Shown here: positions 27,244 to 64,000 of the stretch, piece by piece
How the letters are laid out: every line of letters begins with the position of its first letter
Position numbering within the stretch: position 1 is the stretch's first letter
Assembly: GCA_004431415.1 (NCBI GenBank)
Contig: QPMI01000040.1
Location: 452,322-516,321 of the forward strand
Reading direction: 5' to 3'
Length of the DNA stretch: 64,000 nt
From: Cyanophora paradoxa CCMP329
Taxonomy: Eukaryota; Plantae; Glaucophyta
Program-made: the position numbers and the translations under genes
Notes under the pieces: model-generated
Seen by the model: only the letters and a program-made list of their open reading frames with translations
Database searches by the model: none
Told to the model about the DNA's origin: nothing

Positions 27244-27331
<88 letters not shown>
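27244..27331. repeat. (TA)n microsatellite, about 43 units
   Basis: Directly visible. Confidence 0.98.
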
Positions 27332-34849: not shown

Positions 34850-35483
34850 TTTTTTTTTTTTGAGAGACTACGGTGGGGCGAACCCCCCGTAGGTAGTAAT
34901 ATTAGGGACAACAAAGCAATCACAAATCAAAGAAACAGGAAACTAGCACAAAATACAGAATCAAGAGGGATCACGAGAAGGGACACGATCAGAAGAACGC
35001 AAAAGATAAGGAGAACGAGCACGAGGAGAAGGAGTAGAAGAGCTCAGGGACGTCGACGCAGAAGTACTAGTCACACTACGAGGAGCACGGGGACGCAGCG
35101 AATAAGGAGAACGAGCACGAGGAACTACAGTCGAAGACGAAGATCTAGACGAAGACGACAAGACAGAGCTAACAGCAGAACTAGAAGACGTAGTCGCAGG
35201 AGGCAGATCGAGAGGTGGCAGAACAGTAGGAGAGGCGAAACGTAGGACACCACTAGAGGGGAGAATCAAAGCTGGCGGAGTGTCTAAACGGAATCGAGGT
35301 TGTATAGTTGGTACTACGGTAAAACAATGGACGGCTGAAGACTAATCTGAGGAACTGGGGACGACACGAGGAAAGGGGCAGAACTCGGATTCAGACTCGG
35401 AATCGGCAGTATAAGAGGAGGGGCGAAACGCAAGCCAGTAGTGACAGGGAAGGCAGACGATGGGGCTGAACCAGGCGGGAGAG
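34850..35483 (-). mobile_element. 5'-truncated non-LTR retro-insertion (3' fragment with poly(A))
   Basis: T12 at 34850-34861; stem-loop CTACGG(T)GGGG-CGAA-CCCCCCGTAG next to it; strongly purine-skewed body; residual ORF with RSPYSLRPR; candidate 6-bp TSD ACATTC at 34844-34849 and 35484-35489. Confidence 0.6.
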
Positions 35484-35867
35484 ACATTCAAATGATTCAT
35501 AGATAATTATTAACCACCTCCAAAAATTAAAGCGCCGAAAGTTGTTTTCATTCAGCTGAGACGACCAATGGGCCCCTCGGGGCCTGTACTCGGTACAACT
35601 GCGGCCGATTGGGCCGCGCATCGATATCTGTACCCTTGCGGCACAACTCTGTAACCTCTCACTTGAGTGTGAGTTGCATGCCCGTGGCCATGGCTGCGAA
35701 TGAACATGCAGTTGCATACTAGTTCTTTGATCACAATTTGGATCACAAGGAATCAAAATCTTCGCAATAAACAAATCCTAGGCGTTCTGCGAAGAACTAC
35801 TATATATAGCTAACTACGTATACTATACACTAGCACTAAAATAAGATGGACCAGTTGTAACTGCCAC

Positions 35868-35911
35868 GTACTTAAATTCTAGCTCTGCAGTACTTAAATT
35901 CTAGCTCTGCA
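35868..35911. repeat. Perfect 22-bp tandem duplication (GTACTTAAATTCTAGCTCTGCA x2)
   Basis: Directly visible, just downstream of the giant gene's stop codon. Confidence 0.85.
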
Positions 35912-36005
35912 TAGAAAGATGGGGAATGTGCGCAAATAGCAGAAGTACAATAGTAGATAGAATCAATAAGATTTAACTAAATGATAGCCTCAGCGTCTCG
36001 GACGC

Positions 36006-39000
36006 TCAGCGACGGAGGGGTACCTCTGCTTTCGGCATAGTCGTGCAGAACCACGTCACTGAGGGGTGTGCAACACAGATGCACATTGCGGTCGATGCGC
36101 TGCCTGCCGGGATCCGTGCCACAGGGCCGCCGCTATCAGAGATTCTCGTTTCTTTAGTGCAGGATCTAGCCGAGGCAACAGAGAGGTCAATACATCGAAA
36201 ACAGAGAGGATTGCAATCGCAAAGACGCACGACGACGATACGACGATATACGCGATGTACCCAGCCCCACTCTCTGTGCACTGCGGAAGGTACACGTTGT
36301 AGACTGACGTAGTACCGCTGCAGTTGACGGCGATGATGTTCTTGTGCGTGCTGTACGGCGTGCTGGCCGCAATACTGTAGGTCGTAGCGGCGTTCCCAGT
36401 GTACGATAGCTTGCCTGCAAGAGCATTCATATTAGAGCGATGCAGACATGCGAGAAATCAGCTCGAAGACGCACTCAGATAAACCGTGCCGTCCGAGGCC
36501 GAAACAGTGAACTTGTTTGTTCCAACATTCACTCCCCCGTACGAATTGATGAGCCCGGTGACTGCTTGAGCGCCTGTGATGGATGCCGCGCCAGTCACAC
36601 CCAGAGTTCCTGTGATCAACGTGCTGCCCGTTTCGTCGACTGTAAATCGGTTTATAGCGCCTGTGGCACCGGAATTGACCACCAGTCCAATGCGCGCAGT
36701 CAGGAGCCCATTGACAGTGACTGCGTCGGAAGCGGTCACTGCGCCCGTGAATGTCGAGGCACTCGTAACTTTGAGCGTTCCTGCAGCTTCAACGTTTCCG
36801 GACGCGTCGACTGTGAACATCGTTCCCATCACAGTGACACCGCCGTTAGCGTTGATCGCGCCCGTGAACGTCGACACTCCAGTGACGTCGAGGGTGCCTG
36901 AAATGTCGACGGTTCCTGCAGCGTCAACTGAGAACATCGATGTGGCCACGTTGATGCCGCCGTTGGCGTTCAGAAGCGCCGAGCTGGTCGTGGTGCCCGT
37001 GATGCCGAGTGTGCCCGTAACCAACATGTTTCCTGACGCGTCTACGGTGAGCCGGTTCAGCCGAACATTGATCCCGCCAATTGCGTGTAACAATCCCGTC
37101 ATAGTAGCAGTCCCAGTGACGCCGAGAGTTCCCGATACGAGGGCATTGCCCGATCGGTCGACGACGAAGCGGCTCGTCGCAACATTGATGCCTCCGTTAG
37201 CGTTTAGGATGCCAGTCGACGTCGAAGTGCCCGTAACGCCTAGCGTGCCAGAGACGAGCACACTTCCCGAAGAGGACACCGAGAACCTGTTCACAGTGTT
37301 CACAGACACAGCCAGGCCGTCGTTCGCGTTGATGAGGCCAGTCCATGTCGAGGAGCCAGTGACGCCGACGGAGCCCGAAACAAGAAGGGTTCCAGACACG
37401 CCGACATTGCCCGCAGCGTCCACAGTGAACATCGATGTGGCCACGTTGATACCGCCGTCAGCGTTCAGAAGAGCAGAGCTGGTCGTGGTGCCCGTGATGC
37501 CAAGTGTGCCCGTGATCAGCGTATTGCCCGACATGTCAATAGTGAGCTGGTCCAGGCGCACGTTGATCCCGCCGTTCGCGTTCAGCAGACCTGCGCTTGA
37601 GGCCGTGCCGCTCACGCTCGCCGAGCCCAGCACCGTCAGCAGGCCCGTCATGGTCGCGGTCCCAGTCACTCCGATGGTGCCGGAGACGAGGGTGTTGCCC
37701 GAGGCATCAACGACGAATCTGTTCGACCGAACATTGATCCCTCCATTCGCGTTGAGCAGGCCAGTCAAAGTCTGAGTGCCAGTCACGCCCAAGGTGCCAG
37801 CGACGAGAACACTGCCTGAAGACGTGACCACGAACTTGTTCGCCGCCACATTCAGCCCGCCGTTCGCGTTCACGAGGCCAGTCCATGTCGAGGAGCCAGT
37901 GACGCCGACGGAGCCCGAAACAGAGAGAGTTCCAGACACGCCGACATTGCCCGCAGCGTCCACAGTGAACATCGATGTGGCCACGTTTATGCCCCCGTCA
38001 GCGTTCAGGAGTGCCGTGCTGGTCGTGGTGCCCGTGATGCCAAGCGTGCCCGTGATCAGCGTATTGCCCGACATATCGACGGTGAGCTGGTCCAAGCGCA
38101 CGTTGATCCCGCCGTTCGCGTTCAGCAGCCCCGTCATGGTCGCGGTCCCAGTCACTCCGATGGTGCCGGAGACGAGGGTGTTGCCCGAGGCGTCGATACT
38201 CAACTGGTTCCATCGAACATTCAATCCCCCGTTCGCGTTGAGCAGGCCCGTCATGGTCGCAGTCCCAGTCACTCCGATGGTGCCGGAGACGAGGGTGTTG
38301 CCCGAGGCATCAACGACGAATCTGTTCGACCGAACATTGATCCCTCCATTCGCGTTGAGCAGGCCAGTCAAAGTCTGAGTGCCAGTCACGCCCAAGGTGC
38401 CAGCGACGAGAACACTGCCTGAAGACGTGACCACGAACTTGTTCGCCGCCACATTCAGCCCGCCGTTCGCGTTCACGAGGCCAGTCCATGTCGAGGAGCC
38501 AGTGACGCCGACGGAGCCCGAAACAGAGAGAGTTCCAGACACGCCGACATTGCCCGCAGCGTCCACAGTGAACATCGATGTGGCCACGTTGATACCGCCG
38601 TCAGCGTTCAGGAGTGCCGTGCTGGTCGTAGTGCCCGTGATGCCAAGCGTGCCCGTGATCAGCGTATTGCCCGACATGTCAATAGTGAGCTGGTCCAAGC
38701 GCACGTTGATCCCGCCATTCGCGTTCAGCAGCCCCGACATGGTCGCAGTCCCAGTCACTCCGATGGTGCCGGAGACGAGGGTGTTGCCCGAGGCGTCGAT
38801 ACTCAATTGGTTCCATCGAACATTCAATCCCCCGTTCGCGTTGAGCAGGCCAGTCGATGTTAAAGTACCAGTTATGCGAAGAACCCCAGTAACCAGAGCG
38901 TTGCCAGAGGAATCCACGACGAACTTGTTGGATCGAACATTGAAACCGCCAAGAGCATTAAGCAAGCCTGTAGACGTCATTGTCCCCGATATCCCGACCA

Positions 39001-42000
39001 TTCCTGTCGCCAGCACGTTGCCCGAGATGTCGACGCTGAGTCTGTTGGAGAGCACGTTCAGCCCGCCATTCGCATTCATCAGGCCTGCGCTGGTGGTGGT
39101 TCCGCTCACGCTCGCCGAGCCCAGCACCGTTAGCAAGCCCGTGCTCGTCACTGTGCCCGTCACTCCCAGGGCGCCCGTAGCCAGCACGTTCCCTGAGGCG
39201 TCCACCACGAACTTGTTCGCGCCTACTGCGAGGCCTCCATCCATGGAGAACGAGCCCAGCAGAGAAAGGAGCCCCGTGCTTGTCACCGTGCCCGTCACAC
39301 CCAGGGATCCGGTCACGAGTGCGTTACCCGAGATGTCGACCGCGAAACGGTTCGCCAGCACGTTCAGCCCGCCGTTCGCGTTCACAAGGCCCGCGCTGGT
39401 GGTGGTTCCGCTCACGCTCGCCGAGCCCAGCACCGTCAGCAGGCCCGTGCTCGTCACCGTGCCCGTCACGCCCAGCGACCCAGTCACAAGCGCGTTGCCC
39501 GAGATGTCGACCGCGAAACGGTTCGACAGCACGTTCAGCCCGCCGTTCGCGTTCACAAGGCCCGCGCTGGTGGTGGTTCCGCTAACGCTCGCCGAGCCCA
39601 GCACCGTCAGCAGGCCCGTGCTGGTCACTGTGCCCGTCACTCCCAGGGCGCCCGTAGCCAGCACGTTCCCTGAGGCGTCCACCACGAACTTGTTCGTGCC
39701 TACTGCGAGGCCTCCATCCATGGAGAACGAGCCCAGCAGAGAAAGGAGCCCCGTGCTCGTCACCGTGCCCGTCACGCCCAGCGACCCAGTCACAAGCGCA
39801 TTGCCCGAGATGTCGACTGCGAAACGGTTCGACAGCACGTTCAGCCCGCCGTTCGCGTTCACAAGGCCTGCGCTGGTGGTGGTTCCGCTCACGCTCGCCG
39901 AGCCCAGCACCGTCAGCAGGCCCGTGCTGGTCACCGTGCCCGTCACTCCCAGGGCGCCCGTAGCCAGCACGTTCCCTGAGGCGTCCACCACGAACTTGTT
40001 TGTGCCTACTGCGAGGCCTCCATCCATGGAGAACGAGCCCAGCAGAGAAAGGAGCCCCGTGCTTGTCACCGTGCCCGTCACACCCAGGGATCCGGTCACG
40101 AGTGCGTTACCCGAGATGTCGACCGCGAAACGGTTCGCCAGCACGTTCAGCCCGCCGTTTGCGTTCACAAGGCCCGCGCTGGTGGTGGTTCCGCTCACGC
40201 TCGCCGAGCCCAGCACCGTCAGCAGGCCCGTGCTGGTTACTGTGCCCGTCACGCCCAGCGACCCAGTCACAAGCGCGTTACCCGAGATGTCGACCGCGAA
40301 ACGGTTCGCCAGCACGTTCAGCCCGCCGTTTGCGTTCACAAGGCCTGCGCTGGTGGTGGTTCCGCTCACGCTCGCCGAGCCCAGCACCGTCAGCAGGCCC
40401 GTGCTCGTCACCGTGCCCGTCACGCCCAGCGACCCAGTCACAAGCGCGTTGCCCGAGATGTCGACCGCGAAACGGTTCGACAGCACATTCAGCCCCCCGT
40501 TTGCGTTCACAAGGCCCGCGCTGGTGGTGGTTCCGCTCACGCTCGCCGAGCCCAGCACCGTCAGAAGGCCCGTGCTGGTCACTGTGCCCGTCACTCCCAG
40601 GGCGCCCGTAGCCAGCACGTTCCCTGAGGCGTCCACCACGAACTTGTTCGTGCCTACTGCGAGGCCTCCATCCATGGAGAACGAGCCCAGCAGAGAAAGG
40701 AGCCCCGTGCTTGTCACCGTGCCCGTCACACCCAGGGATCCGGTCACGAGTGCGTTACCCGAGGCGTCGACCGCGAAACGGTTCGCCAGCACGTTCAGCC
40801 CGCCGTTTGCGTTCACAAGGCCCGCGCTGGTGGTGGTTCCGCTCACGCTCGCCGAGCCCAGCACCGTCAGCAGGCCCGTGCTGGTTACCGTGCCCGTCAC
40901 GCCCAGCGACCCAGTCACAAGCGCGTTGCCCGAGATGTCAACCGCGAAACGGTTCGACAGCACATTCAGCCCCCCGTTTGCGTTCACAAGGCCCGCGCTG
41001 GTGGTGGTTCCGCTCACGCTCGCCGAGCCCAGCACCGTCAGCAGGCCCGTGCTGGTAACCGTGCCCGTCACGCCCAGCGACCCAGTCACAAGCGCGTTGC
41101 CCGAGATGTCGACTGCGAAACGGTTCGACAGCACATTCAGCCCGCCGTTCGCGTTCACAAGGCCTGCGCTGGTGGTGGTTCCGCTCACGCTCGCCGAGCC
41201 CAGCACCGTCAGAAGGCCCGTGCTGGTCACTGTGCCCGTCACTCCCAGGGCGCCCGTAGCCAGCACGTTCCCTGAGGCGTCCACCACGAACTTGTTCGTG
41301 CCTACTGCGAGGCCTCCATCCATGGAGAACGAGCCCAGCAGAGAAAGGAGCCCCGTGCTTGTCACCGTGCCCGTCACACCCAGGGATCCGGTCACGAGTG
41401 CGTTACCCGAGATGTCGACCGCGAAACGGTTCGCCAGCACGTTCAGCCCGCCGTTTGCGTTCACAAGGCCCGCGCTGGTGGTGGTTCCGCTCACGCTCGC
41501 CGAGCCCAGCACCGTCAGTAGGCCCGTGCTGGTTACCGTGCCCGTCACGCCCAGCGACCCAGTCACAAGCGCGTTGCCCGAGATGTCAACCGCGAAACGG
41601 TTCGACAGCACATTCAGCCCCCCGTTTGCGTTCACAATGCCTGCGCTGGTGGTGGTTCCGCTCACGCTCGCCGAGCCCAGCACCGTCAGCAGGCCCGTGC
41701 TGGTAACCGTGCCCGTCACGCCCAGGGCGCCCGTAGCCAGCACGTTCCCTGAGGCGTCCACCACGAACTTGTTCGTGCCTACTGCGAGGCCTCCATCCAT
41801 GGAGAACGAGCCCAGCAGAGAAAGGAGCCCCGTGCTTGTCACCGTGCCCGTAACACCCAGGGATCCGGTCACGAGTGCGTTACCCGAGGCGTCGACCGCG
41901 AAACGGTTCGCCAGCACGTTCAGCCCGCCGTTCGCGTTCACCAGGCCCGCGCTGGTGGTGGTTCCGCTCACGCTCGCCGAGCCCAGCACCGTCAGCAGGC

Positions 42001-45000
42001 CCGTGCTCGTCACCGTGCCCGTCACGCCCAGCGACCCAGTCACAAGCGCGTTGCCCGAGATGTCAACCGCGAAACGGTTCGACAGCACATTCAGCCCGCC
42101 ATTCGCGTTCACAAGGCCTGCGCTGGTGGTGGTTCCGCTCACGCTCGCCGAGCCCAGCACCGTCAGAAGGCCCGTGCTGGTCACTGTGCCCGTCACTCCC
42201 AGGGCGCCCGTAGCCAGCACGTTCCCTGAGGCGTCCACCACGAACTTGTTCGTGCCTACTGCGAGGCCTCCATCCATGGAGAACGAGCCCAGCAGAGAAA
42301 GGAGCCCCGTGCTTGTCACCGTGCCCGTCACACCCAGGGATCCGGTCACGAGTGCGTTACCCGAGATGTCGACCGCGAAACGGTTCGCCAGCACGTTCAG
42401 CCCGCCGTTTGCGTTCACAAGGCCCGCGCTGGTGGTGGTTCCGCTCACGCTCGCCGAGCCCAGCACCGTCAGCAGGCCCGTGCTGGTTACCGTGCCCGTC
42501 ACGCCCAGCGACCCAGTCACAAGCGCGTTGCCCGAGATGTCAACCGCGAAACGGTTCGACAGCACATTCAGCCCCCCGTTTGCGTTCACAAGGCCTGCGC
42601 TGGTGGTGGTTCCGCTCACGCTCGCCGAGCCCAGCACCGTCAGCAGGCCCGTGCTCGTCACCGTGCCCGTCACGCCCAGGGCGCCCGTAGCCAGCACGTT
42701 CCCTGAGGCGTCCACCACGAACTTGTTCGTGCCTACTGCGAGGCCTCCATCCATGGAGAACGAGCCCAGCAGAGAAAGGAGCCCCGTGCTTGTCACCGTG
42801 CCCGTAACACCCAGGGATCCGGTCACGAGTGCGTTACCCGAGATGTCGACCGCGAAACGGTTCGCCAGCACGTTCAGCCCGCCGTTCGCGTTCACCAGGC
42901 CCGCGCCGGTGGTGGTTCCGCTCACGCTCGCCGAACCCAGCACCGTCAGCAGGCCCGTGCTCGTCACCGTGCCCGTCACGCCCAGCGACCCAGTCAAAAG
43001 CGCGTTGCCCGAGATGTCAACCGCGAAACGGTTCGACAGCACATTCAGCCCCCCGTTTGCGTTCACCAGGCCCGCGCTGGTGGTGGTTCCGCTCACGCTC
43101 GCCGAGCCCAGCACCGTCAGCAGGCCCGTGCTGGTAACCGTGCCCGTCACGCCCAGCGACCCAGTCACAAGCGCGTTGCCCGAGATATCGACCGCGAAAC
43201 GGTTCGACAGCACATTCAGCCCGCCGTTTGCGTTCACAAGGCCTGCGCTGGTGGTGGTTCCGCTCACGCTCGCCGAGCCCAGCACCGTCAGCAAGCCCGT
43301 GCTGGTCACTGTGCCCGTCACTCCTAGGGCGCCCGTAGCCAGCACATTCCCTGAGGCGTCCACCACGAACTTGTTCGTGCCTACTGCGAGGCCTCCATCC
43401 ACGGAGAACGAGCCCAGCAGAGAAAGGATCCCCGTGCTTGTCACCGTGCCCGTCACACCCAGGGATCCGGTCACGAGTGCGTTACCCGAGATGTCGACCG
43501 CGAAACGGTTCGCCAGCACGTTCAGCCCGCCGTTTGCGTTCACAAGGCCCGCGCTGGTGGTGGTTCCGCTCACGCTCGCCGAGCCCAGCACCGTCAGCAG
43601 GCCCGTGCTGGTAACCGTGCCCGTCACGCCCAGCGACCCAGTCACAAGCACGTTGCCCGAGATGTCAACCGCGAAACGGTTCGACAGCACATTCAGCCCC
43701 CCGTTTGCGTTCACAAGGCCCGCGCTGGTGGTGGTTCCGCTCACGCTTGCCGAGCCCAGCACCGTCAGCAAGCCCGTGCTCGTCACCGTGCCCGTCACGC
43801 CCAGCGACCCAGTCACAAGCGCGTTGCCCGAGATGTCAACCGCGAAACGGTTCGACAGCACATTCAGCCCGCCGTTTGCGTTCACAAGGCCCGCGCTGGT
43901 GGTGGTTCCGCTCACGCTCGCCGAGCCCAGCACCGTCAGCAGGCCCGTGCTCGTCACCGTGCCCGTCACGCCCAGCGACCCAGTCACAAGCATGTTGCCC
44001 GAGATGTCGACTGCGAAACGGTTCGACAGCACGTTCAGCCCGCCGTTCGCATTCACAAGGCCTGTGCTGGTGGTGGTTCCGCTAACGCTCGCCGAGCCCA
44101 GCACCGTTAGCAAGCCCGTGCTGGTCACTGTGCCCGTCACTCCCAGGGCGCCCGTAGCCAGCACGTTCCCTGAGGCGTCCACCACGAACTTGTTCGTGCC
44201 TACTGCGAGGCCTCCATCCATGGAGAACGAGCCCAGCAGAGAAAGGAGCCCCGTGCTTGTCACCGTGCCCGTCACACCCAGGGATCCGGTCACGAGTGCG
44301 TTACCCGAGATGTCGACCGCGAAACGGTTCGCAAGCACGTTCAGCCCGCCGTTTGCGTTCACCAGGCCCACGCTGGTGGTGGTTCCGCTCACGCTCGCCG
44401 AGCCCAGCACCGTCAGCAGGCCCGTGCTCGTCACCGTGCCCGTCACGCCCAGCGACCCAGTCAAAAGCGCGTTGCCCGAGATGTCAACCGCGAAACGGTT
44501 CGACAGCACGTTCAGCCCGCCGTTCGCGTGCACCAGGCCCGCGCTGGTGGTGGTTCCGCTCACGCTCGCCGAGCCCAGCACCGTCAGCAGGCCCGTGCTC
44601 GTCACCGTGCCCGTCACGCCCAGCGACCCAGTCACAAGCGCGTTGCCCGAGATGTCGACTGCGAAACGGTTCGACAGCACGTTCAGCCCGCCGTTCGCGT
44701 TCACAAGGCCCACGCTGGTGGTGGTTCCGCTTACGCTCGCCGAGCCCAGCACCGTCAGCAGGCCCGTGCTGGTCACCGTGCCCGTCACTCCCAGAGCGCC
44801 CGTAGCCAGCACGTTCCCTGAGGCGTCCACCACGAACTTGTTCGTGCCTACTGCGAGGCCTCCATCCATGGAGAACGAGCCCAGCAGAGAAAGGAGCCCC
44901 GTGCTTGTCACCGTGCCCGTCACACCCAGGGATCCGGTCACCAGCGCATTGCCCGAGGCGTCAACCGCGAAACGGTTCGCCAGCACGTTCAGCCCGCCGT

Positions 45001-48000
45001 TTGCGTTCACAAGGCCCGCGCTGGTGGTGGTTCCGCTCACGCTCGCCGAGCCCAGCACCGTCAGCAGGCCCGTGCTGGTTACCGTGCCCGTCACTCCCAG
45101 GGCGCCCGTAGCCAGCACGTTCCCTGAGGCGTCCACCACGAACTTGTTCGTGCCCACCGCGAGCCCTCCTTCCATCGAGAACGAGCCCAGCAGCGAGAGG
45201 AGGCCCGTGCTCGTCACAGTGCCCGTCACGCCCAGCAATCCGGTCACCAGCGCATTGCCCGAGGCGTCGACCGCGAAACGGTTCGACAGCACGTTCAGCC
45301 CGCCGTTTGCGTTCACAAGGCCCGCGCTGGTGGTGGTTCCGCTCACGCTCGCCGAGCCCAGCACCGTCAGCAGGCCCGTGCTGGTTACCGTGCCCGTCAC
45401 GCCCAGCGACCCCGTCGCAACGGCGTTGCCCGACATGTCCACCACGAACTGATTCCACCTCACGTTCAGCCCGCCGTTTGCGTTCACAAGGCCCGCGCTG
45501 GTGGTGGTTCCGCTCACGCTCGCCGAGCCCAGCACCGTCAGCAGGCCCGTGCTGGTAACCGTGCCCGTCACGCCCAGCGACCCAGTCACAAGCGCGTTGC
45601 CCGAGATGTCGACCGCGAAACGGTTCGACAGCACATTCAGCCCCCCGTTTGCGTTCACGAGGCCCGCGCTGGTGGTGGTTCCGCTCACGCTCGCCGAGCC
45701 CAGCACCGTCAGCAAGCCCGTGCTCGTCACCGTGCCCGTCACGCCCAGCGACCCTGTCACAAGCGCGTTGCCCGAGATGTCAACCGCGAAACGGTTCGAC
45801 AGCACATTCAGCCCGCCGTTTGCGTTCACAAGGCCCGCGCTGGTGGTGGTTCCGCTCACGCTCGCCGAGCCCAGCACCGTCAGCAGGCCCGTGCTCGTCA
45901 CCGTGCCCGTCACGCCCAGCGACCCAGTCACAAGCGTGTTGCCCGAGATGTCGACTGCGAAACGGTTCGACAGCACGTTCAGCCCGCCGTTCGCGTTCAC
46001 AAGGCCTGCGCTGGTGGTGGTTCCGCTAACGCTCGCCGAGCCCAGCACCGTTAGCAGGCCCGTGCTGGTCACTGTGCCCGTCACTCCCAGGGCGCCCGTA
46101 GCCAGCACGTTCCCTGAGGCGTCCACCACGAACTTGTTCGTGCCTACTGCGAGGCCTCCATCCATGGAGAACGAGCCCAGCAGAGAAAGGAGCCCCGTGC
46201 TTGTCACCGTGCCCGTCACACCCAGGGATCCGGTCACGAGTGCGTTACCCGAGATGTCGACCGCGAAACGGTTCGCAAGCACGTTCAGCCCGCCGTTTGC
46301 GTTCACAAGGCCCACGCTGGTGGTGGTTCCGCTCACGCTCGCCGAGCCCAGCACCGTCAGCAGGCCCGTGCTCGTCACCGTGCCCGTCACGCCCAGCGAC
46401 CCAGTCAAAAGCGCGTTGCCCGAGATGTCAACCGCGAAACGGTTCGACAGCACGTTCAGCCCGCCGTTCGCGTGCACCAGGCCCGCGCTGGTGGTGGTTC
46501 CGCTCACGCTCGCCGAGCCCAGCACCGTCAGCAGGCCCGTGCTCGTCACCGTGCCCGTCACGCCCAGCGACCCAGTCACAAGCGCGTTGCCCGAGATGTC
46601 GACTGCGAAACGGTTCGACAGCACGTTCAGCCCGCCGTTCGCGTTCACAAGGCCCACGCTGGTGGTGGTTCCGCTCACGCTCGCCGAGCCCAGCACCGTC
46701 AGCAGGCCCGTGCTGGTCACCGTGCCCGTCACTCCCAGAGCGCCCGTAGCCAGCACGTTCCCTGAGGCGTCCACCACGAACTTGTTCGTGCCTACTGCGA
46801 GGCCTCCATCCATGGAGAACGAGCCCAGCAGAGAAAGGAGCCCCGTGCTTGTCACCGTGCCCGTCACACCCAGGGATCCGGTCACCAGCGCATTGCCTGA
46901 GGCGTCAACCGCGAAACGGTTCGCCAGCACGTTCAGCCCGCCGTTTGCGTTCACAAGGCCCGCGCTGGTGGTGGTTCCGCTCACGCTCGCCGAGCCCAGC
47001 ACCGTCAGCAGGCCCGTGCTGGTTACCGTGCCCGTCACTCCCAGGGCGCCCGTAGCCAGCACGTTCCCTGAGGCGTCCACCACGAACTTGTTCGTGCCCA
47101 CCGCGAGCCCTCCTTCCATCGAGAACGAGCCCAGCAGCGAGAGGAGGCCCGTGCTCGTCACAGTGCCCGTCACGCCCAGCGATCCGGTCACGAGTGCGTT
47201 GCCTGAGGCGTCGACCGCGAAACGGTTCGACAGCACGTTCAGCCCGCCGTTCGCGTTCACCAGGCCCGCGCTGATGGTGGTCCCCGCCACGCTCGCCGAG
47301 CCCAGCACCGTCAGCAGGCCCGTGCTCGTCACCGTGCCCGTCACGCCCAGCGACCCCGTCGCAACGGCGTTGCCCGACATGTCCACCACGAACTGATTCC
47401 ACCTCACGTTCAGCCCGCCATTCGCGTTCAGCAGCCCCGTCGACGTCAGCGTGCCCGTCACCCCGACCATGCCTGTCGCCAGCGCGTTGCCCGAGATATC
47501 GACCGCGAAACGGTTCGACAGCACGTTCAGCCCGCCGTTTGCGTTCACCAGGCCCGCGCTTGACGTCGTCCCGCTCACGCTCGCCGAGCCCAGCACCGTC
47601 AGCAGGCCCGTGCTCGTCACCGTGCCCGTCACTCCCAGGGCGCCCGTAGCCAGCACGTTCCCTGAGGCGTCCACCACGAACTTGTTCGTGCCCACCGCGA
47701 GCCCTCCTTCCATCGAGAACGAGCCCAGCAGCGAGAGGAGGCCCGTGCTCGTCACAGTGCCCGTCACGCCCAGCGATCCGGTCACCAGCGCATTGCCCGA
47801 GGCGTCGACCGCGAAACGGTTCGACAGCACGTTCAGCCCGCCGTTCGCGTTCACCAGGCCCGCGCTGGTGGTGGTCCCCGCCACGCTCGCCGAGCCCAGC
47901 ACCGTCAGCAGGCCCGTGCTCGTCACAGTGCCCGTCACGCCCAGCGACCCCGTCGCAAGCGCGTTGCCCGACATGTCCACCACGAACTGATTCCACCTCA

Positions 48001-54000: not shown

Positions 54001-57000
54001 CCATGCCTGTCGCCAGCGCGTTGCCCGAGATATCGACCGCGAAACGGTTCGACAGCACGTTCAGCCCGCCGTTCGCGTTCACCAGGCCAGCGCTTGACGT
54101 CGTCCCGCTCACGCTCGCCGAGCCCAGCACCGTCAGCAGGCCCGTGCTGGTTACCGTGCCCGTCACTCCCAGGGCGCCCGTAGCCCGCACGTTCCCTGAG
54201 GCGTCCACCACGAACTTGTTCGTGCCCACCGCGAGCCCTTCTTCCATCGAGAACGAGCCCAGCAGCGAGAGGAGGCCCGTGCTCGTCACAGTGCCCGTCA
54301 CGCCCAGCGATCCGGTCACCAGCGCATTGCCCGAGGCGTCAACCGCGAAACGGTTCGACAGCACGTTCAGCCCGCCGTTCGCGTTCACCAGGCCCGCGCT
54401 GGTGGTGGTCCCCGCCACGCTCGCCGAGCCCAGCACCGTCAGCAGGCCCGTGCTCGTCACCGTGCCCGTGACACCCAGCGACCCCGTCGCAAGCACGTTG
54501 CCCGACATGTCCACCACGAACTGATTCCACCTCACGTTCAGCCGCCGTTCGCGTTCAGCAGCCCCGTCGACGTCAGCGTGCCCGTCACCCCGACCATGCT
54601 GTCGCCAGCGCGTTGCCCGAGATATCGACCGCGAAACGGTTCGACAGCACGTTCAGCCGCCGTTCGCGTTCACCAGGCCAGCGCTTGACGTCGTCCCGCT
54701 CACGCTCGCCGAGCCCAGCACCGTCAGCAGGCCCGTGCTCGTCACCGTGCCGTCACTCCAGGGCGCCCGTAGCCAGCACGTTCCCTGAGGCGTCCACCAC
54801 GAACTTGTTCGTGCCCACCGCGAGCCTCCTTCCATCGAGAACGAGCCCAGCAGCGAGAGGAGGCCCGTGCTCGTCACAGTGCCCGTCACGCCCAGCGATC
54901 CGGTCACCAGCGCATTGCCCGAGGCGTCAACCGCGAAACGGTTCGACAGCACGTTCAGCCCCCCGTTCGCGTTCACCAGGCCCGCGCTGTGGTGGTCCCC
55001 GCCACGCTCGCCGAGCCAGCACCGTCAGCAGGCCCGTGCTCGTCACCGTGCCCGTGGCACCCAGCGACCCCGTCGCAAGCGCGTTGCCCGACATGTCCAC
55101 CACGAACTGATTCCACCTCACGTTCAGCCCGCCGTTCGCGTTCAGCAGCCCCGTCGACGTCAGCGTGCCCGTCACCCCGACCATGCCTGTCGCCAGCGCG
55201 TTGCCCGAGATATCGACCGCGAAACGGTTCGACAGCACGTTCAGCCGCCGTTCGCGTTCACCAGGCCAGCGCTTGACGTCGTCCCGCTCACGCTCGCCGA
55301 GCCAGCACCGTCAGCAGGCCCGTGCTCGTCACCGTGCCCGTCACTCCCAGGGCGCCCGTAGCCAGCACGTTCCCTGAGGCGTCCACCACGAACTTGTTCG
55401 TGCCCACCGCGAGCCTCCTTCCATCGAGAACGAGCCCAGCAGCGAGAGGAGGCCCGTGCTCGTCACAGTGCCCGTCACGCCCAGCGATCCGGTCACCAGC
55501 GCATTGCCCGAGGCGTCAACCGCGAAACGGTTCGACAGCACGTTCAGCCCCCGTTCGCGTTCACCAGGCCGCGCTGGTGGTGGTCCCCGCCACGCTCGCC
55601 GAGCCCAGCACCGTCAGCAGGCCCGTGCTCGTCACCGTGCCCGTCACCCAGCGACCCCGTCGCAAGCACGTTGCCCGACATGTCCACCACGAACTGATTC
55701 CACCTCACGTTCAGCCCGCCGTTCGCGTTCAGCAGCCCCGTCGACGTCAGCGTGCCCGTCACCCCGACCATGCCTGTCGCCAGCGCGTTGCCCGAGATAT
55801 CGACCGCGAAACGGTTCGACAGCACGTTCAGCCCGCCGTTTGCGTTCACCAGGCCCGCGCTTGACGTCGTCCCGCTCACGCTCGCCGAGCCCAGCACCGT
55901 GAGCAGGCCCGTGCTCGTCACCGTGCCCGTCACTCCCAGGGCGCCCGTAGCCAGCACGTTCCCTGAGGCGTCCACCACGAACTTGTTCGTGCCCACCGCG
56001 AGCCCTCCTTCCATCGAGAACGAGCCAGCAGCGAGAGGAGGCCCGTGCTCGTCACAGTGCCCGTCACGCCCAGCGATCCGGTCACCAGCGCATTGCCCGA
56101 GGCGTCAACCGCGAAACGGTTCGACAGCACGTTCAGCCCCCGTTCGCGTTCACAGGCCCGCGCTGGTGGTGGTCCCCGCCACGCTCGCCGAGCCCAGCAC
56201 CGTCAGCAGGCCCGTGCTCGTCACCGTGCCGTCACGCCCAGCGACCCCGTCGCAACGCGTTGCCCGACATGTCCACCACGAACTGATTCCACCTCACGTT
56301 CAGCCCGCCGTTCGCGTTCAGCAGCCCCGTCGACGTCAGCGTGCCCGTCACCCCGACCATGCCTGTCGCCAGCGCGTTGCCCGAGATATCGACCGCGAAA
56401 CGGTTCGACAGCACGTTCAGCCCGCCGTTCGCGTTCACCAGGCCCGCGCTTGACGTCGTCCCGCTCACGCTCGCCGAGCCCAGCACCGTCAGCAGGCCCG
56501 TGCTCGTCACCGTGCCCGTCACTCCCAGGGCGCCCGTAGCCAGCACGTTCCCTGAGGCGTCCACCACGAACTTGTTCGTGCCCACCGCGAGCCCTCCTTC
56601 CATCGAGAACGAGCCCAGCAGCGAGAGGAGGCCCGTGCTCGTCACAGTGCCCGTCACGCCCAGCGATCCGGTCACCAGCGCATTGCCCGAGGCGTCAACC
56701 GCGAAACGGTTCGACAGCACGTTCAGCCCCCCGTTCGCGTTCACCAGGCCCGCGCTGGTGGTGTCCCGCCACGCTCGCCGAGCCCAGCACCGTCAGCAGG
56801 CCCGTGCTCGTCACCGTGCCCGTCACGCCCAGCGACCCCGTCGCAAGCGCGTTGCCCGACATGTCCACCACGAACTGATTCCACCTCACGTTCAGCCCAC
56901 CGTTCGCGTTCAGCAGCCCCGTCGACGTCAGCGTGCCCGTCACCCCGACCATGCCTGTCGCCAGCGCGTTGCCCGAGATATCGACCGCGAAACGGTTCGA

Positions 57001-60000
57001 CAGCACGTTCAGCCCGCCGTTTGCGTTCACCAGGCCAGCGCTTGACGTCGTCCCGCTCACGCTCGCCGAGCCCAGCACCGTCAGCAGGCCCGTGCTCGTC
57101 ACCGTGCCCGTCACTCCCAGGGCGCCCGTAGCCAGCACGTTCCCTGAGGCGTCCACCACGAACTTGTTCGTGCCCACCGCGAGCCCTCCTTCCATCGAGA
57201 ACGAGCCCAGCAGCGAGAGGAGGCCCGTGCTCGTCACAGTGCCCGTCACGCCCAGCGATCCGGTCACCAGCGCATTGCCCGAGGCGTCAACCGCGAAACG
57301 GTTCGACAGCACGTTCAGCCCCCCGTTCGCGTTCACCAGGCCCGCGCTGGTGGTGGTCCCCGCCACGCTCGCCGAGCCCAGCACCGTCAGCAGGCCCGTG
57401 CTCGTCACCGTGCCCGTCACGCCCAGCGACCCCGTCGCAAGCGCGTTGCCCGACATGTCCACCACGAACTGATTCCACCTCACGTTCAGCCCGCTGTTCG
57501 CGTTCAGCAGCCCCGTCGACGTCAGCGTGCCCGTCACCCCGACCATGCCTGTCGCCAGCGCGTTGCCCGAGATATCGACCGCGAAACGGTTCGACAGCAC
57601 GTTCAGCCCGCCGTTCGCGTTCACCAGGCCCGCGCTTGACGTCGTCCCGCTCACGCTCGCCGAGCCCAGCACCGTCAGCAGGCCCGTGCTCGTCACCGTG
57701 CCCGTCACTCCCAGGGCGCCCGTAGCCAGCACGTTCCCTGAGGCGTCCACCACGAACTTGTTCATGCCCACCGCGAGCCCTCCTTCCATCGAGAACGAGC
57801 CCAGCAGCGAGAGGAGGCCCGTGCTCGTCACAGTGCCCGTCACGCCCAGCGATCCGGTCACCAGCGCATTGCCCGAGGCGTCAACCGCGAAACGGTTCGA
57901 CAGCACGTTCAGCCCGCCGTTCGCGTTCACCAGGCCGCGCTGGTGGTGGTCCCCGCCACGCTCGCCGAGCCCAGCACCGTCAGCAGGCCGTGCTCGTCAC
58001 CGTGCCCGTCACGCCCAGCGACCCCGTCGCAAGCGCGTTGCCCGACATGTCCACCACGAACTGATTCCACCTCACGTTCAGCCCGCTGTTCGCGTTCAGC
58101 AGCCCGTCGACGTCAGCGTGCCCGTCACCCCGACCATGCCTGTCGCCAGCGCGTTGCCCGAGATATCGACCGCGAAACGGTTCGACAGCACGTTCAGCCC
58201 GCCGTTCGCGTTCACCAGGCCGCGCTTGACGTCGTCCCGCTCACGCTCGCCGAGCCCAGCACCGTCAGCAGGCCCGTGCTGGTTACCGTGCCCGTCACTC
58301 CCAGGGCGCCCGTAGCCCGCACGTTCCCTGAGGCGTCCACCACGAACTTGTTCGTGCCCACCGCGAGCCCTCCTTCCATCGAGAACGAGCCCAGCAGCGA
58401 GAGGAGGCCCGTGCTCGTCACAGTGCCCGTCACGCCCAGCGATCCGGTCACCAGCGCATTGCCCGAGGCGTCAACCGCGAAACGGTTCGACAGCACGTTC
58501 AGCCCGCCGTTCGCGTTCACCAGGCCCGCGCTGGTGGTGGTCCCCGCCACGCTCGCCGAGCCCAGCACCGTCAGCAGGCCCGTGCTCGTCACCGTGCCCG
58601 TCACGCCCAGCGACCCCGTCGCAAGCGCGTTGCCCGACATGTCCACCACGAACTGATTCCACCTCACGTTCAGCCCACCGTTCGCGTTCAGCAGCCCCGT
58701 CGACGTCAGCGTGCCCGTCACCCCGACCATGCCTGTCGCCAGCGCGTTGCCCGAGATATCGACCGCGAAACGGTTCGACAGCACGTTCAGCCCGCCGTTT
58801 GCGTTCACCAGGCCCGCGCTTGACGTCGTCCCGCTCACGCTCGCCGAGCCCAGCACCGTCAGCAGGCCCGTGCTCGTCACCGTGCCCGTCACTCCCAGGG
58901 CGCCCGTAGCCAGCACGTTCCCTGAGGCGTCCACCACGAACTTGTTCGTGCCCACCGCGAGCCCTCCTTCCATCGAGAACGAGCCCAGCAGCGAGAGGAG
59001 GCCCGTGCTCGTCACAGTGCCCGTCACGCCCAGCGATCCGGTCACCAGCGCATTGCCCGAGGCGTCAACCGCGAAACGGTTCGACAGCACGTTCAGCCCC
59101 CCGTTCGCGTTCACCAGGCCCGCGCTGGTGGTGGTCCCCGCCACGCTCGCCGAGCCCAGCACCGTCAGCAGGCCCGTGCTCGTCACCGTGCCCGTCACGC
59201 CCAGCGACCCCGTCGCAAGCGCGTTGCCCGACATGTCCACCACGAACTGATTCCACCTCACGTTCAGCCCGCTGTTCGCGTTCAGCAGCCCCGTCGACGT
59301 CAGCGTGCCCGTCACCCCGACCATGCCTGTCGCCAGCGCGTTGCCCGAGATATCGACCGCGAAACGGTTCGACAGCACGTTCAGCCCGCCGTTCGCGTTC
59401 ACCAGGCCCGCGCTTGACGTCGTCCCGCTCACGCTCGCCGAGCCCAGCACCGTCAGCAGGCCCGTGCTCGTCACCGTGCCCGTCACTCCCAGGGCGCCCG
59501 TAGCCAGCACGTTCCCTGAGGCGTCCACCACGAACTTGTTCATGCCCACGCGAGCCCTCCTTCCATCGAGAACGAGCCCAGCAGCGAGAGGAGGCCCGTG
59601 CTCGTCACAGTGCCCGTCACGCCCAGCGATCCGGTCACCAGCGCATTGCCCGAGGCGTCAACCGCGAAACGGTTCGACAGCACGTTCAGCCCGCCGTTCG
59701 CGTTCACCAGGCCCGCGCTGGTGGTGGTCCCGCCACGCTCGCCGAGCCCAGCACCGTCAGCAGGCCCGTGCTCGTCACCGTGCCCGTCACGCCCAGCGAC
59801 CCCGTCGCAAGCGCGTTGCCCGACATGTCCAACACGAACTGATTCCACCTCACGTTCAGCCCGCTGTTCGCGTTCAGCAGCCCCGTCGACGTCAGCGTGC
59901 CCGTCACCCCGACCATGCCTGTCGCCAGCGCGTTGCCCGAGATATCGACCGCGAAACGGTTCGACAGCACGTTCAGCCCGCCGTTCGCGTTCACCAGGCC

Positions 60001-63000
60001 CGCGCTTGACGTCGTCCCGCTCACGCTCGCCGAGCCCAGCACCGTCAGCAGGCCCGTGCTGGTCACCGTGCCCGTCACTCCCAGGGCGCCCGTAGCCAGC
60101 ACGTTCCCTGAGGCGTCCACCACGAACTTGTTCATGCCCACCGCGAGCCCTCCTTCCATCGAGAACGAGCCCAGCAGCGAGAGGAGGCCCGTGCTCGTCA
60201 CAGTGCCCGTCACGCCCAGCGATCCGGTCACCAGCGCATTGCCCGAGGCGTCAACCGCGAAACGGTTCGACAGCACGTTCAGCCCGCCGTTCGCGTTCAC
60301 CAGGCCCGCGCTGGTGGTGGTCCCCGCCACGCTCGCCGAGCCCAGCACCGTCAGCAGGCCCGTGCTCGTCACCGTGCCCGTCACGCCCAGCGACCCCGTC
60401 GCAAGCGCGTTGCCCGACATGTCCACCACGAACTGATTCCACCTCACGTTCAGCCCGCTGTTCGCGTTCAGCAGCCCCGTCGACGTCAGCGTGCCCGTCA
60501 CCCCGACCATGCCTGTCGCCAGCGCGTTGCCCGAGATATCGACCGCGAAACGGTTCGACAGCACGTTCAGCCCGCCGTTCGCGTTCACCAGGCCCGCGCT
60601 TGACGTCGTCCCGCTCACGCTCGCCGAGCCCAGCACCGTCAGCAGGCCCGTGCTCGTCACCGTGCCCGTCACTCCCAGGGCGCCCGTAGCCAGCACGTTC
60701 CCTGAGGCGTCCACCACGAACTTGTTCATGCCCACCGCGAGCCCTCCTTCCATCGAGAACGAGCCCAGCAGCGAGAGGAGGCCCGTGCTCGTCACAGTGC
60801 CCGTCACGCCCAGCGATCCGGTCACCAGCGCATTGCCCGAGGCGTCAACCGCGAAACGGTTCGACAGCACGTTCAGCCCCCCGTTCGCGTTCACCAGGCC
60901 CGCGCTGGTGGTGGTCCCCGCCACGCTCGCCGAGCCCAGCACCGTCAGCAGGCCCGTGCTCGTCACCGTGCCCGTCACGCCCAGCGACCCCGTCGCAAGC
61001 GCGTTGCCGACATGTCCACCACGAACTGATTCCACCTCACGTTCAGCCCGCTGTTCGCGTTCAGCAGCCCCGTCGACGTCAGCGTGCCCGTCACCCCGAC
61101 CATGCCTGTCGCCAGCGCGTTGCCCGAGATATCGACCGCGAAACGGTTCGACAGCACGTTCAGCCCGCCGTTCGCGTTCACCAGGCCCGCGCTTGACGTC
61201 GTCCCGCTCACGCTCGCCGAGCCCAGCACCGTCAGCAGGCCCGTGCTCGTCACCGTGCCCGTCACTCCCAGGGCGCCCGTAGCCAGCACGTTCCCTGAGG
61301 CGTCCACCACGAACTTGTTCATGCCCACCGCGAGCCCTCCTTCCATCGAGAACGAGCCCAGCAGCGAGAGGAGGCCCGTGCTCGTCACAGTGCCCGTCAC
61401 GCCCAGCGATCCGGTCACCAGCGCATTGCCCGAGGCGTCAACCGCGAAACGGTTCGACAGCACGTTCAGCCCGCCGTTCGCGTTCACCAGGCCCGCGCTG
61501 GTGGTGGTCCCCGCCACGCTCGCCGAGCCCAGCACCGTCAGCAGGCCCGTGCTCGTCACCGTGCCCGTCACTCCCAGGGCGCCCGTAGCTAGCACGTTTC
61601 CTGAGGCGTCCACCACGAACTTGTTCGTGCCTACCGACAACCCGCCTTCAATAGAGAACGACCCAAGCACCGTCAGCAGGCCCGTGCTCGTCACCGTGCC
61701 CGTGACACCCAGCGACCCCGTTGCGAGCACGTTGCCCGACATGTCCACCACGAACTGGTTCCACCTCACGTTCAGCCCGCCGTTCGCGTTCAGCAGCCCC
61801 GTCGACGTCACGGTCCCCGTCACCCCGACCATGCCCGTCGCCAGCGTGTTGCCCGAGATATCGATGCTAAGCTGGTTCCACCTCACGTTCAGCCCGCCGT
61901 TCGCGTTCAGCAGCCCCGTCGACGTCACGGTCCCCGTCACCCCGACCATGCCCGTCGCCAGCGTGTTGCCCGACATGTCCACCACGAACTGATTCCACCT
62001 CACGTTCAGCCCGCCGTTCGCGTTCAGCAGCCCCGTCGACGTCACGGTCCCCGTTACCCCGACCATGCCCGTCGCCAGCGTGTTGCCCGACATGTCCACC
62101 ACAAATTGATTCCACCTCACGTTCAACCCGCCGTTTGCGTTCAGCAGCCCCGTCGACGTCACGGTCCCCGTCACCCCGACCATGCCCGTCGCCAGCGTGT
62201 TGCCCGACATATCAACAACGAACTGATTCCACCTCACGTTCAGCCCGCCGTTCGCGTTCAGCAGCCCCGTCGACGTCACGGTCCCCGTCACCCCGACCAT
62301 GCCCGTCGCCAGCGTGTTGCCCGACATATCGATGCTAAGCTGGTTCCACCTCACGTTCAGCCCGCCGTTCGCGTTCAGCAGCCCCGTCGACGTCACGGTC
62401 CCCGTCACCCCGACCATGCCCGTCGCCAGCGTGTTGCCTGATAGGTCGACGCTAAAGTGGTTCCACCTCACGTTCAGCCCGCCGTTCGCGTTCAGCAGCC
62501 CCGTCGACGTCACGGTCCCCGTTACCCCGACCATGCCCGTCGCCAGCGTGTTGCCGGACATGTCCACCACAAATTGATTCCACCTCACGTTCAGCCCGCC
62601 GTTCGCGTTCAGCAGCCCCGTCGACGTCACGGTCCCCGTTACCCCGACCATGCCCGTCGCCAGCGTGTTGCCCGACATGTCCACCACAAATTGATTCCAC
62701 CTCACGTTCAACCCGCCGTTTGCGTTCAGCAGCCCCGTCGACGTCACGGTCCCCGTCACCCGGACCATGCCCGTCGCCAGCGTGTTGCCCGACATATCAA
62801 CAACGAACTGATTCCACCTCACGTTCAGCCCGCCGTTCGCGTTCAGCAGCCCCGTTGACGTCACGGTCCCCGTCATCCCCACCATGCCCGTCGCCAGCGT
62901 GTTGCCCGAGATATCGATGCTAAGCTGGTTCCACCTCACGTTCAGCCCGCCGTTCGCGTTCAGCAGCCCCGTCGACGTCACGGTCCCCGTCACCCCGACC

Positions 63001-64000
63001 ATGCCCGTCGCCAGCGTGTTGCCTGATAGGTCGACGCCGAAGTGGTTCCACCTCACGTTCAGCCCGCCGTTCGCGTTCAGCAGCCCCGTCGACGTCACGG
63101 TCCCCGTCACCCCGACCATGCCCGTCGCCAGCGTGTTGCCCGACATGTCCACCACGAACTGATTCCACCTCACGTTCAGCCCGCCGTTCGCGTTCAGCAG
63201 CCCCGTCGACGTCACGGTCCCCGTCACTCCGACCATGCCCGTCGCCAGCGTGTTGCCCGACATATCGATGCTAAGCTGGTTCCACCTCACATTCAGCCCG
63301 CCGTTCGCGTTCAGCAGCCCCGTCGACGTCACGGTCCCCGTCACCCCGACCATGCCCGTCGCCAGCGTGTTGCCCGACATATCAACAACGAACTGATTCC
63401 ACCTCACGTTCAGCCCGCCGTTCGCGTTCAGCAGCCCCGTCGACGTCACGGTCCCCGTCACCCCGACAATGCCCGTCGCCAGCGTGTTGCCCGAGATATC
63501 GATGCTAAGCTGGTTCCACCTCACGTTCAGGCCGCCGTTCGCGTTCAGCAGCCCCGTCGACGTCACGGTCCCCGTCACCCCGACCATGCCCGTCGCCAGC
63601 GTGTTGCCCGACATGTCCACCACGAACTGATTCCACCTCACGTTCAGCCCGCCGTTCGCGTTCAACAGGGCCGTCGATGTGACAGTGCCCGTCAATCCGG
63701 TCATTCCTGTCGCAAGCACGTTGCCAGACGAGTCAACAATGAACTTGTTTGTGCCGATCGCAAGGCTTCCCGCAAATATGAACGGCCCGAGGACGTGAAG
63801 AGCTCCAGTGGCCGTCAATGTGCCGGTGACGCCAAGGGCGCCAGTAACCATGGTATTGCCAGACATGTCCACCGCGAACTGGTTCCACCTCACGTTCAGC
63901 CCGCCGTTCGCGTTCAGCAGCCCCGTCGACGTCACGGTCCCCGTCACCCCGACCATGCCCGTCGCCAGCGTGTTGCCCGAGATATCGATGCTAAGCTGGT
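36006..64000 (-). CDS. Giant (>9,200 aa, 5' end beyond window) Gly/Thr/Ser/Val/Asn beta-repeat fibre-like protein with Cys-rich C-terminal cap
   Basis: 6,025-aa uninterrupted ORF (36458-54535) continued by the same repeats to 64000, with 1-bp deletions in 54.5-61.0 kb. Terminal introns 36415-36474 and 36166-36230 (both GTGCGT..AG) add exons 36231-36414 and 36006-36165 in frame, ending ..TWFCTTMPKAEVPLRR-stop. Confidence 0.85.
47397..61560 (-). repeat. 594-bp (198-aa) higher-order coding repeat, about 24 near-identical copies
   Basis: Antisense ORF starts recur every 594 bp (47451, 48045, 48639, ...); each unit comprises 57+45+57+39-aa modules. Confidence 0.95.
61750..64000 (-). repeat. 117-bp (39-aa) coding tandem repeat, about 19 copies in window
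   Basis: Unit MVGVTGTVTSTGLLNANGGLNVRWNQFVVDMSGNTLATG with variants, and one diverged pair near 63660-63870. Confidence 0.95.

What the first reader, a model, noticed from the sequence alone, without database searches (positions are those of the whole stretch)
36006..64000. Giant hexad-Gly beta-fibre protein: a eukaryotic phage-tail-fibre-like filament whose length may be gene-encoded
Seen: >9,200 aa in which Gly recurs every 6 residues (GNALAT-GSLGVT-GTVTST-GLLTVL-GSASVA-GTTTSA-GLVNAN-GGLNVx), punctuated by a 9-residue xNxFxVDxS motif. The main modules are 9+6n aa long (39, 45, 57), so indels preserved the hexad register. Pro, Cys and Tyr are almost absent. Known: short Gly-delimited strands with hairpin knuckles characterise trimeric triple-beta-helix fibres of phage tails and spikes. 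Inference: at about 0.48 nm per strand layer the part in this window alone would be roughly 0.7 um long, the scale of flagellar hairs, extrusome or mucocyst threads, or adhesive fibrils. It carries host-type spliceosomal introns, so it is a host gene. This is the best candidate for an undescribed system here.
Basis: partly seen in the sequence, partly recalled or inferred. Interest (0 to 1): 0.9.

Follow-up and report, generated by a model that had tools for sequence, protein, structure and literature searches.

The report
Giant virus-like trimeric fibre in alga
The freshwater alga Cyanophora paradoxa has an expressed, spliced gene for a protein of over 9,200 amino acids built from the repeat of phage and giant-virus tail fibres, which most likely folds three-at-a-time into a secreted thread at least 0.7 micrometres long, possibly one of the alga's unexplained flagellar hairs.

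Summary
A minus-strand Cyanophora paradoxa gene holds about 185 modules of 39/45/57 aa (9+6n in 117 of 119; Gly opens 98% of hexads), then two introns that are spliced in RNA contigs from three studies, and a 112-aa Cys-rich tip. The 5' end lies outside the window. The module matches phage and giant-virus fibres, several ending in an S74 chaperone. AlphaFold gives a three-strand knuckle plus unpaired hexads, as expected for one chain of a trimeric triple beta-helix. New evidence for secretion: no N-glycosylation sequon in 48 distinct Asn contexts, against 26% in viral kin. Two marine algal lineages carry similar giant fibres, one with signal peptide and S74. The category is not new: TLP-12/Amoebophrya is a ~20,000-aa eukaryotic triple-beta-helix fibre, though with another repeat and an ICA that this gene lacks. 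Trimer, location and function are unshown; flagellar hair is the lead candidate. The scan noted a similarly titled gene on another piece of this genome (s1-512873, unchecked). Verdict: new variant of a known kind.

The parts
36475..64000 (-). Giant exon encoding the fibre shaft (about 185 modules of 39/45/57 aa, about 9,175 codons); continues beyond the window's right edge, so start codon, signal peptide and anchor are not seen
61755..63998 (-). Block of almost only 39-aa modules (117-bp repeat), open frame; EukProt fragments tig00021105_g18219/g18225 carry the same module
47393..61754 (-). About 24 copies of a 594-bp (198-aa; 57+45+57+39) higher-order unit, 98-99% identical; about 31 strand layers, roughly 15 nm per unit (inferred)
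54542..61007 (-). 29 single-base deletions breaking the frame, probably long-read consensus errors
39041..47392 (-). Irregular mix of 57- and 45-aa modules
36475..39040 (-). Diverged terminal modules, including a 603-bp duplication
36415..36474 (-). Intron 1, 60 nt, GT-AG
   Evidence: spliced in X15, X17, X19
36231..36414 (-). Exon 2: first half of the C-terminal tip; weak resemblance to the Phage_depo_C (PF25692) beta-sandwich
36166..36230 (-). Intron 2, 65 nt, GT-AG
   Evidence: spliced in X15, X17, X19
36006..36165 (-). Exon 3: second half of the tip (4 Cys, terminal Trp motif) and stop codon; no membrane helix or GPI signal by eye
35707..36005 (-). 3' UTR covered by the same RNA contigs
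   Evidence: table 8

Best explanation
A host gene of Cyanophora paradoxa, derived from a phage/giant-virus-type fibre module, encodes one chain of a secreted homotrimeric filament. Each Gly-led hexad is one short strand of an intertwined triple beta-helix (one 0.48-nm layer); each 9+ residue knuckle is a three-strand antiparallel meander that forms a beta-prism with its two partners, as in T4 gp34. The Cys-rich 112-aa tip probably nucleates trimer folding in the ER and forms the distal end; the anchor would be N-terminal, outside the window. Because the filament is one unbroken trimer, its length (at least about 0.7 um) is set by the number of modules, which changes by unequal crossing-over. 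Role: an extracellular hair or thread; the 'long, narrow' flagellar hair is the single most likely structure (about 35%), then a cell-surface fibril or a mucocyst thread. Shown: gene, splicing, repeat geometry, homology, sequon loss. Inferred: trimer, secretion, length. Unshown: location and function.
For: Spliced transcript in three studies. Module homologous to viral fibres: PHROG tail fibre and structural protein hits, 9 of 44 relatives end in S74, the chaperone of triple beta-helices, giant-virus contexts, 19 IMG/VR loci. AlphaFold monomer pLDDT 86 with a three-strand meander per module and unpaired extended hexads; BFVD tail-fibre matches down to E 1.8e-7; weak PDB lists led by Mu fibre, T4 gp34 and spikes. 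Length steps of 6 aa fit one layer of a triple helix. Sequons: 0 of 48 distinct Asn contexts against 471 of 1,822 in IMG/VR relatives (Fisher p 1.5e-6); 2 of 135 in a marine algal relative whose neighbouring proteins show the expected rate; loss of buried sequons marks secretory proteins (PMC5562741). Syntenic algal relatives have a signal-peptide-like start, introns and S74. C. paradoxa has long narrow flagellar hairs and mucocysts (PMC6704402).
Against: No trimer model could be run; PDB matches are not significant (E 0.1 or worse, Z 3.8 or less). No signal peptide seen (5' end missing). No S74/ICA, and the tip's assignment is statistically weak exon by exon. One algal relative (L004) keeps sequons, so the signature is not universal. 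29 frameshifts stand in the assembly. No protein-level or localisation data.
Confidence: 0.7

Rival explanations
1. Monomeric beta-solenoid or bactofilin-like triangular beta-helix (three hexads per rung) acting inside the cell or as an ice/surface-binding rod.
For: Weak Pfam Bactofilin hits, E 0.004-0.012; Gly/Thr/Val hexads suit beta-solenoids.
Against: Scores are below the cut-off (17.9 against 27.9 bits). Modules differ by 6 aa, not by whole 18-aa rungs. AlphaFold leaves the hexads unpaired. Relatives carry S74. Sequon loss argues against a cytosolic protein.
Confidence: 0.07
2. Fibre gene of an endogenous virus (polinton-like or giant) still serving a virion rather than the cell.
For: Closest modules are viral/phage-type; the scan notes many proviral fibres in this genome (unchecked); the upstream flank is not visible.
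Against: Two spliced short introns and a 3' UTR; GC3 0.84-0.91 in the array; sequons purged while viral relatives keep them; no viral gene recognised downstream; 28 kb or more is as long as a whole polinton-like genome (14-40 kb, PMC12220804 abstract).
Confidence: 0.07
3. A decaying pseudogene or an assembly-inflated repeat: the frameshifts are real or the array is much shorter.
For: 29 frameshifts; 98-99% identical 594-bp units are hard to assemble; annotation breaks the gene into small models.
Against: All indels are one-base deletions, mostly in C runs, none shared as a fixed allele, no in-frame stop among 85 distinct clean modules. Copies carry private, mostly synonymous substitutions. The repeat-like bin 37553-37700 has about 100 times the unique depth in DNA contigs and 17 times in one RNA run (rough).
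Confidence: 0.08
4. Secreted trimeric fibre as proposed, but used as a heavily O-glycosylated thread (TLP-12-like glycofibril, mucilage or mucocyst cargo, or virus decoy) rather than an anchored hair.
For: 27% Ser+Thr, mostly at alternating hexad positions; TLP-12 precedent; mucocysts in this cell; no C-terminal anchor.
Against: The TLP-12 motif GSxxS never occurs and the relaxed motif never stands in tandem; glycosylation untested. This rival differs from the best reading only in role.
Confidence: 0.25

Closest known systems
TLP-12 glycofibril and Amoebophrya giant proteins (e.g. A0A8J1ZHD7, 19,853 aa; bioRxiv 10.1101/2025.09.30.679562)
   Same: Eukaryotic, giant, Gly-led 6-residue strands, trimeric triple beta-helix, 4.8 A per strand, extracellular fibril of unknown function.
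   Different: TLP-12 is an uninterrupted GSxxSx7 dodecapeptide array with a C-terminal ICA, known from alveolates. This protein has knuckles every 39-57 aa, no GSxxS, no ICA, a small Cys-rich tip, and comes from a glaucophyte.
T4 proximal long tail fibre gp34 C-terminal region (PMC5537660) and related phage/giant-virus fibres (phrog_697, phrog_28263)
   Same: Triple beta-helix punctuated by antiparallel beta-prisms; sequence-similar modules in phage and giant-virus fibres (up to about 50% identity).
   Different: Host gene with introns; at least 7 times longer than gp34; three-strand rather than five-strand knuckles; sequons purged; no virion context.
Phage_depo_C (PF25692), C-terminal beta-sandwich of tailspike depolymerases
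   Same: 8 of 23 tips of related fibres match it; the order of motifs in exons 2-3 resembles it.
   Different: Direct match of these exons is weak or absent; six Cys; no depolymerase beta-helix.
Chlamydomonas mastigoneme (MST1 polymer; PMC7265326, PMC11015965 abstracts)
   Same: Extracellular filament on an algal flagellum (candidate role only).
   Different: MST1 hairs are hydroxyproline-rich polymers of subunits; this shaft has no proline and would be one trimer of gene-set length.

Membership tests
Triple-beta-helix/beta-prism fibre (T4 gp34 type) | Short strands with Gly/Ser/Asn turns and alternating aliphatic residues | tested here: met
   Gly 98% at hexad position 1; L/V/A at positions 3 and 5
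Triple-beta-helix/beta-prism fibre (T4 gp34 type) | Antiparallel sheets punctuating strands that pair only between chains | tested here: met
   AlphaFold monomer: three-strand meander per module, hexads unpaired, pLDDT 86; prediction only
Triple-beta-helix/beta-prism fibre (T4 gp34 type) | Homotrimer | not testable with these tools
   Only single-chain prediction is offered
Triple-beta-helix/beta-prism fibre (T4 gp34 type) | Significant match to a solved fibre structure | tested here: inconclusive
   PDB Foldseek E 0.1 (Mu fibre, gp34), VIA Z up to 3.8, no sequence hit; BFVD E 1.8e-7 to 1e-3
Viral tail fibre (as a virion part) | Encoded in a viral genome among virion genes | tested here: not met
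   Spliced introns, host-like GC3, no viral gene recognised downstream; upstream flank unseen
TLP-12/Amoebophrya glycofibril | Giant eukaryotic chain of Gly-led hexad pairs | tested here: met
   At least 9,290 codons, host C. paradoxa
TLP-12/Amoebophrya glycofibril | Tandem GSxxSx7 dodecapeptides | tested here: not met
   0 GSxxS; 169 G[ST]xx[ST], never two in tandem
TLP-12/Amoebophrya glycofibril | C-terminal ICA (S74) domain | tested here: not met
   No PF13884 hit in the end of exon 1, exon 2 or exon 3
TLP-12/Amoebophrya glycofibril | Dense O-glycan coat | not testable with these tools
   Needs glycoproteomics or cryo-EM
Phage_depo_C tip (PF25692) | Profile match over the whole ~90-aa sandwich | tested here: inconclusive
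   Exon 2: 7.8 bits, about 9 of 1,000 shuffles as high, Atlas lead 0.87; not reproduced with half profiles; exon 3 no match; joined form not searched
Bactofilin / monomeric beta-solenoid | Pfam gathering score and whole-rung repeat | tested here: not met
   17.9 of 27.9 bits; 6-aa length steps; no solenoid in the model
Trimeric autotransporter adhesin (YadA) | C-terminal beta-barrel anchor PF03895 | tested here: not met
   Atlas shape match TM 0.62 to a YadA-family stalk but no anchor domain
MST1-type mastigoneme | Hydroxyproline-rich subunit polymer | tested here: not met
   No proline in the 6,064-codon ORF

The most novel reading that the evidence does not exclude
Algae have repeatedly domesticated a viral tail-fibre module, purged it of N-glycosylation sites and amplified it into single-trimer hairs of gene-set length; in Cyanophora this protein is the long, narrow flagellar hair, a mastigoneme class unrelated to the Chlamydomonas and stramenopile types.
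Probability: 0.25. Interest if true: 0.85.

Novelty: new variant of a known kind. Interest (0 to 1): 0.58.

Why it matters
It gives a testable molecular candidate for glaucophyte surface filaments whose make-up is not given in the ultrastructural study read here, and extends giant eukaryotic triple-beta-helix fibres from alveolates (TLP-12) to a second, knuckled repeat type in a glaucophyte and two marine algal lineages. Such genes are invisible in annotation because long-read errors break them into fragments. The sequon purge is a simple sequence mark that a viral fibre fold was moved into the secretory pathway, usable to screen other genomes. Freshwater cryo-EM surveys could look for a 2-nm fibre with knuckles every 2.9, 3.4 or 4.3 nm.

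Tried and rejected
PDB sequence searches with the repeat (single and profile) found nothing significant. Pairwise and profile comparisons of exons 2 and 3 with related tips were weak. A proxy model of a relative's tip had pLDDT 61 and best Z 4.5 to an Acinetobacter tailspike C-terminus: a lead only. The long plus-strand ORFs (e.g. 38379-45452) are antisense shadows of the repeat and contain no Gly. The host of L003/L005 could not be named; its TTL neighbour is nearest to green algae. The 43-column module tree is too short, and its viral rows were picked by similarity, so direction of transfer is not claimed. Pfam scan of ten neighbouring ORFs gave only an ankyrin protein. The spliced tip was searched exon by exon; the joined form was left out, and the frameshifted stretch was not searched as a read-through.

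Full report
Observation. The finding is a minus-strand gene running in from the right edge of the window. The longest open frame is 54652-36461 (6,064 codons); another open stretch covers 63998-60978. Read in whichever frame is open, the array has about 185 modules, each starting at an F/L-x-V/I-D knuckle motif: 85 of 57 aa, 53 of 39, 42 of 45 and 5 others. In the clean ORF 117 of 119 modules are 9+6n long; Gly occupies the first hexad position in 98%, positions 3 and 5 are mostly L/V/A, and the others mostly T/S/N. Pro is absent and Tyr 0.03%. The array is layered: 39-aa modules at 61.8-64 kb, about 24 near-identical 594-bp units at 47.4-61.8 kb, a 57/45 mix at 39.0-47.4 kb and diverged modules at the 3' end. 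Extra alleles among module copies are about twice as frequent at third codon positions, with no stop in 85 distinct clean modules.

The frame breaks. Between 54542 and 61007 there are 29 one-base deletions and no insertion; 21 lie in runs of three or more identical bases (18% of the unit), at 24 different unit positions. The assembly was made from PacBio RSII reads with Canu, Quiver and majority-rule Illumina correction (PMC6704402), which cannot place short reads in 99%-identical units. I infer errors, not decay, at about 85-90%. The frameshifted stretch was not searched as a read-through.

Expression and host. RNA contigs from three runs of three studies skip 36415-36474 and 36166-36230 (GT-AG on the minus strand) and extend to about 35707; the DNA run does not. 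This gives a 112-aa tip with six Cys and a stop at 36006. The runs are only guessed to be RNA, but the spliced joints settle that. Repeat-like positions 37553-37700 collect about 100 times the unique depth in DNA contigs, roughly in line with a real array. The best database relatives of the 39-aa module are EukProt Cyanophora paradoxa models tig00021105_g18219 and g18225, short frameshift-broken fragments, and a variant on tig00001333_g8181, a likely paralogue. So the host is C. paradoxa and the gene is not annotated as a giant.

Relatives. The module (consensus of 98 segments) is common in phage and giant-virus proteins: 401 representatives at E 0.001 or better; 9 of 44 hits carry S74 (PF13884); PHROG hits include a structural protein (E 4e-17) and a tail fibre; one relative sits among A32 ATPase, VLTF3 and TFIIB genes; 19 IMG/VR loci encode it. 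Composition inflates such scores, but the knuckle motif aligns in register. Two eukaryotic lineages have giant versions. One, on marine contigs up to 1.9 Mb beside UTP24, ABC1 and TTL genes, yields pieces of 6,417 and 7,495 aa, one ending in a small tip domain; its TTL is nearest to green algae. The other, beside a GTP cyclohydrolase II gene, has introns, a signal-peptide-like first exon, at least 15 kb of repeats and, in a syntenic relative, a terminal S74. Cyanophora modules score higher against viral-type modules (up to 150) than against these algal ones (118 at most) and group apart from them in a short tree; this hints at separate capture but does not show it.

Structure. AlphaFold2 on 214 aa with 98 aligned segments gave pLDDT 86: a three-strand antiparallel meander per module, joined by confident but unpaired extended hexads. 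That is what one chain of an intertwined trimer looks like. T4 gp34 has the same plan, a 2-nm triple beta-helix with only inter-chain hydrogen bonds, punctuated by antiparallel prisms (PMC5537660). PDB matches are not significant, though Mu fibre, gp34, Bdellovibrio fibres and spikes lead the lists; BFVD gives tail-fibre matches to E 1.8e-7 and the Atlas a mostly chlorophyte cluster at TM 0.51. Steps of 6 aa add one layer to a triple helix but would break a three-sided monomeric solenoid. Counting 6, 7 and 9 layers per module gives 0.66-0.69 um for the part in the window. The tips of relatives belong to PF25692 Phage_depo_C (8 of 23); exon 2 resembles its first half weakly and exon 3 not measurably. 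The tip was searched exon by exon and the joined step was left out.

Secretion. The 5' end is missing, so I tested N-glycosylation sequons. The shaft has 494 Asn in 6,015 aa and no N-x-S/T where about 133 are expected. Collapsing repeats, 0 of 48 distinct contexts are sequons against 471 of 1,822 in IMG/VR relatives (Fisher p 1.5e-6); the first marine lineage has 2 of 135, while neighbouring proteins of these marine hosts have 10 observed for 9.6 expected. The fold therefore tolerates sequons when made in the cytosol, and two eukaryotic lineages lost them. Loss of buried and interface sequons is a described mark of secretory proteins (PMC5562741). The second marine lineage keeps some, so the mark is not universal. 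The six-Cys tip also suits an oxidising lumen (inference).

Mechanism. Most likely the chain enters the ER, three tips associate, and the shaft zips up from the C-terminus into one stiff trimer whose length is the module count. Zipping from the C-terminus is taken from known ICA and tailspike fibres, not shown here. No C-terminal anchor is visible, so attachment would be N-terminal. C. paradoxa has short flat and long narrow flagellar hairs and mucocysts (PMC6704402); the long narrow hair is the best single candidate (about 35%), with a surface fibril or mucocyst thread as alternatives.

Comparison and novelty. TLP-12 is a freshwater glycofibril made of three chains of dodecapeptides in a triple beta-helix, rising 9.6 A per 12 residues, matched to ~20,000-aa Amoebophrya proteins with a C-terminal ICA (bioRxiv 10.1101/2025.09.30.679562). 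The category of giant eukaryotic tail-fibre-like filament is thus known. This gene is not a TLP-12 member: no GSxxS motif, no ICA, regular knuckles. It works like gp34 and TLP-12 but belongs to neither. I found no paper describing this knuckled type in algae (one search, open-access papers only). Verdict: new variant of a known kind, interest 0.58.

Noticed in passing
window 34413-35668: AT-richer element just downstream of the gene with DNA contig depth of 1,000-27,000 against about 44 for unique DNA, and high depth in RNA runs: a high-copy, transcribed repeat or transposon fragment with a poly-T run near 34850.
   Followed up: no
window 33000-33960, minus strand: A spliced gene with four 49-60 nt introns seen in one RNA run (X19); DNA depth is about double and two variants are seen at 33678-33794, suggesting a two-copy region. 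No Pfam match for one ORF piece.
   Followed up: partly
EukProt tig00001333_g8181 (P0072): A second C. paradoxa locus with a variant of the module, so the alga has at least two such genes; may be the gene noted as s1-512873.
   Followed up: partly
L006 2078-18403 and L008 3053-16361: AT-rich marine contigs, probably giant viruses, with the same module in fibre genes of about 5,400 and at least 3,600 codons, the first broken by long-read frameshifts.
   Followed up: partly
L004 8041-21134, L035 2389-19286, L034 5720-7702: Syntenic giant fibre gene in an intron-rich marine alga (Micromonas-like by GC and intron style, not identified) with signal-peptide-like first exon and S74 end; appears undescribed.
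   Followed up: partly
window 27244-27331; 35868-35911; 14861-15472: (TA)44 microsatellite in a 70% GC region; exact 22-bp tandem duplication in the fibre gene's 3' UTR; ankyrin-repeat ORF.
   Followed up: no
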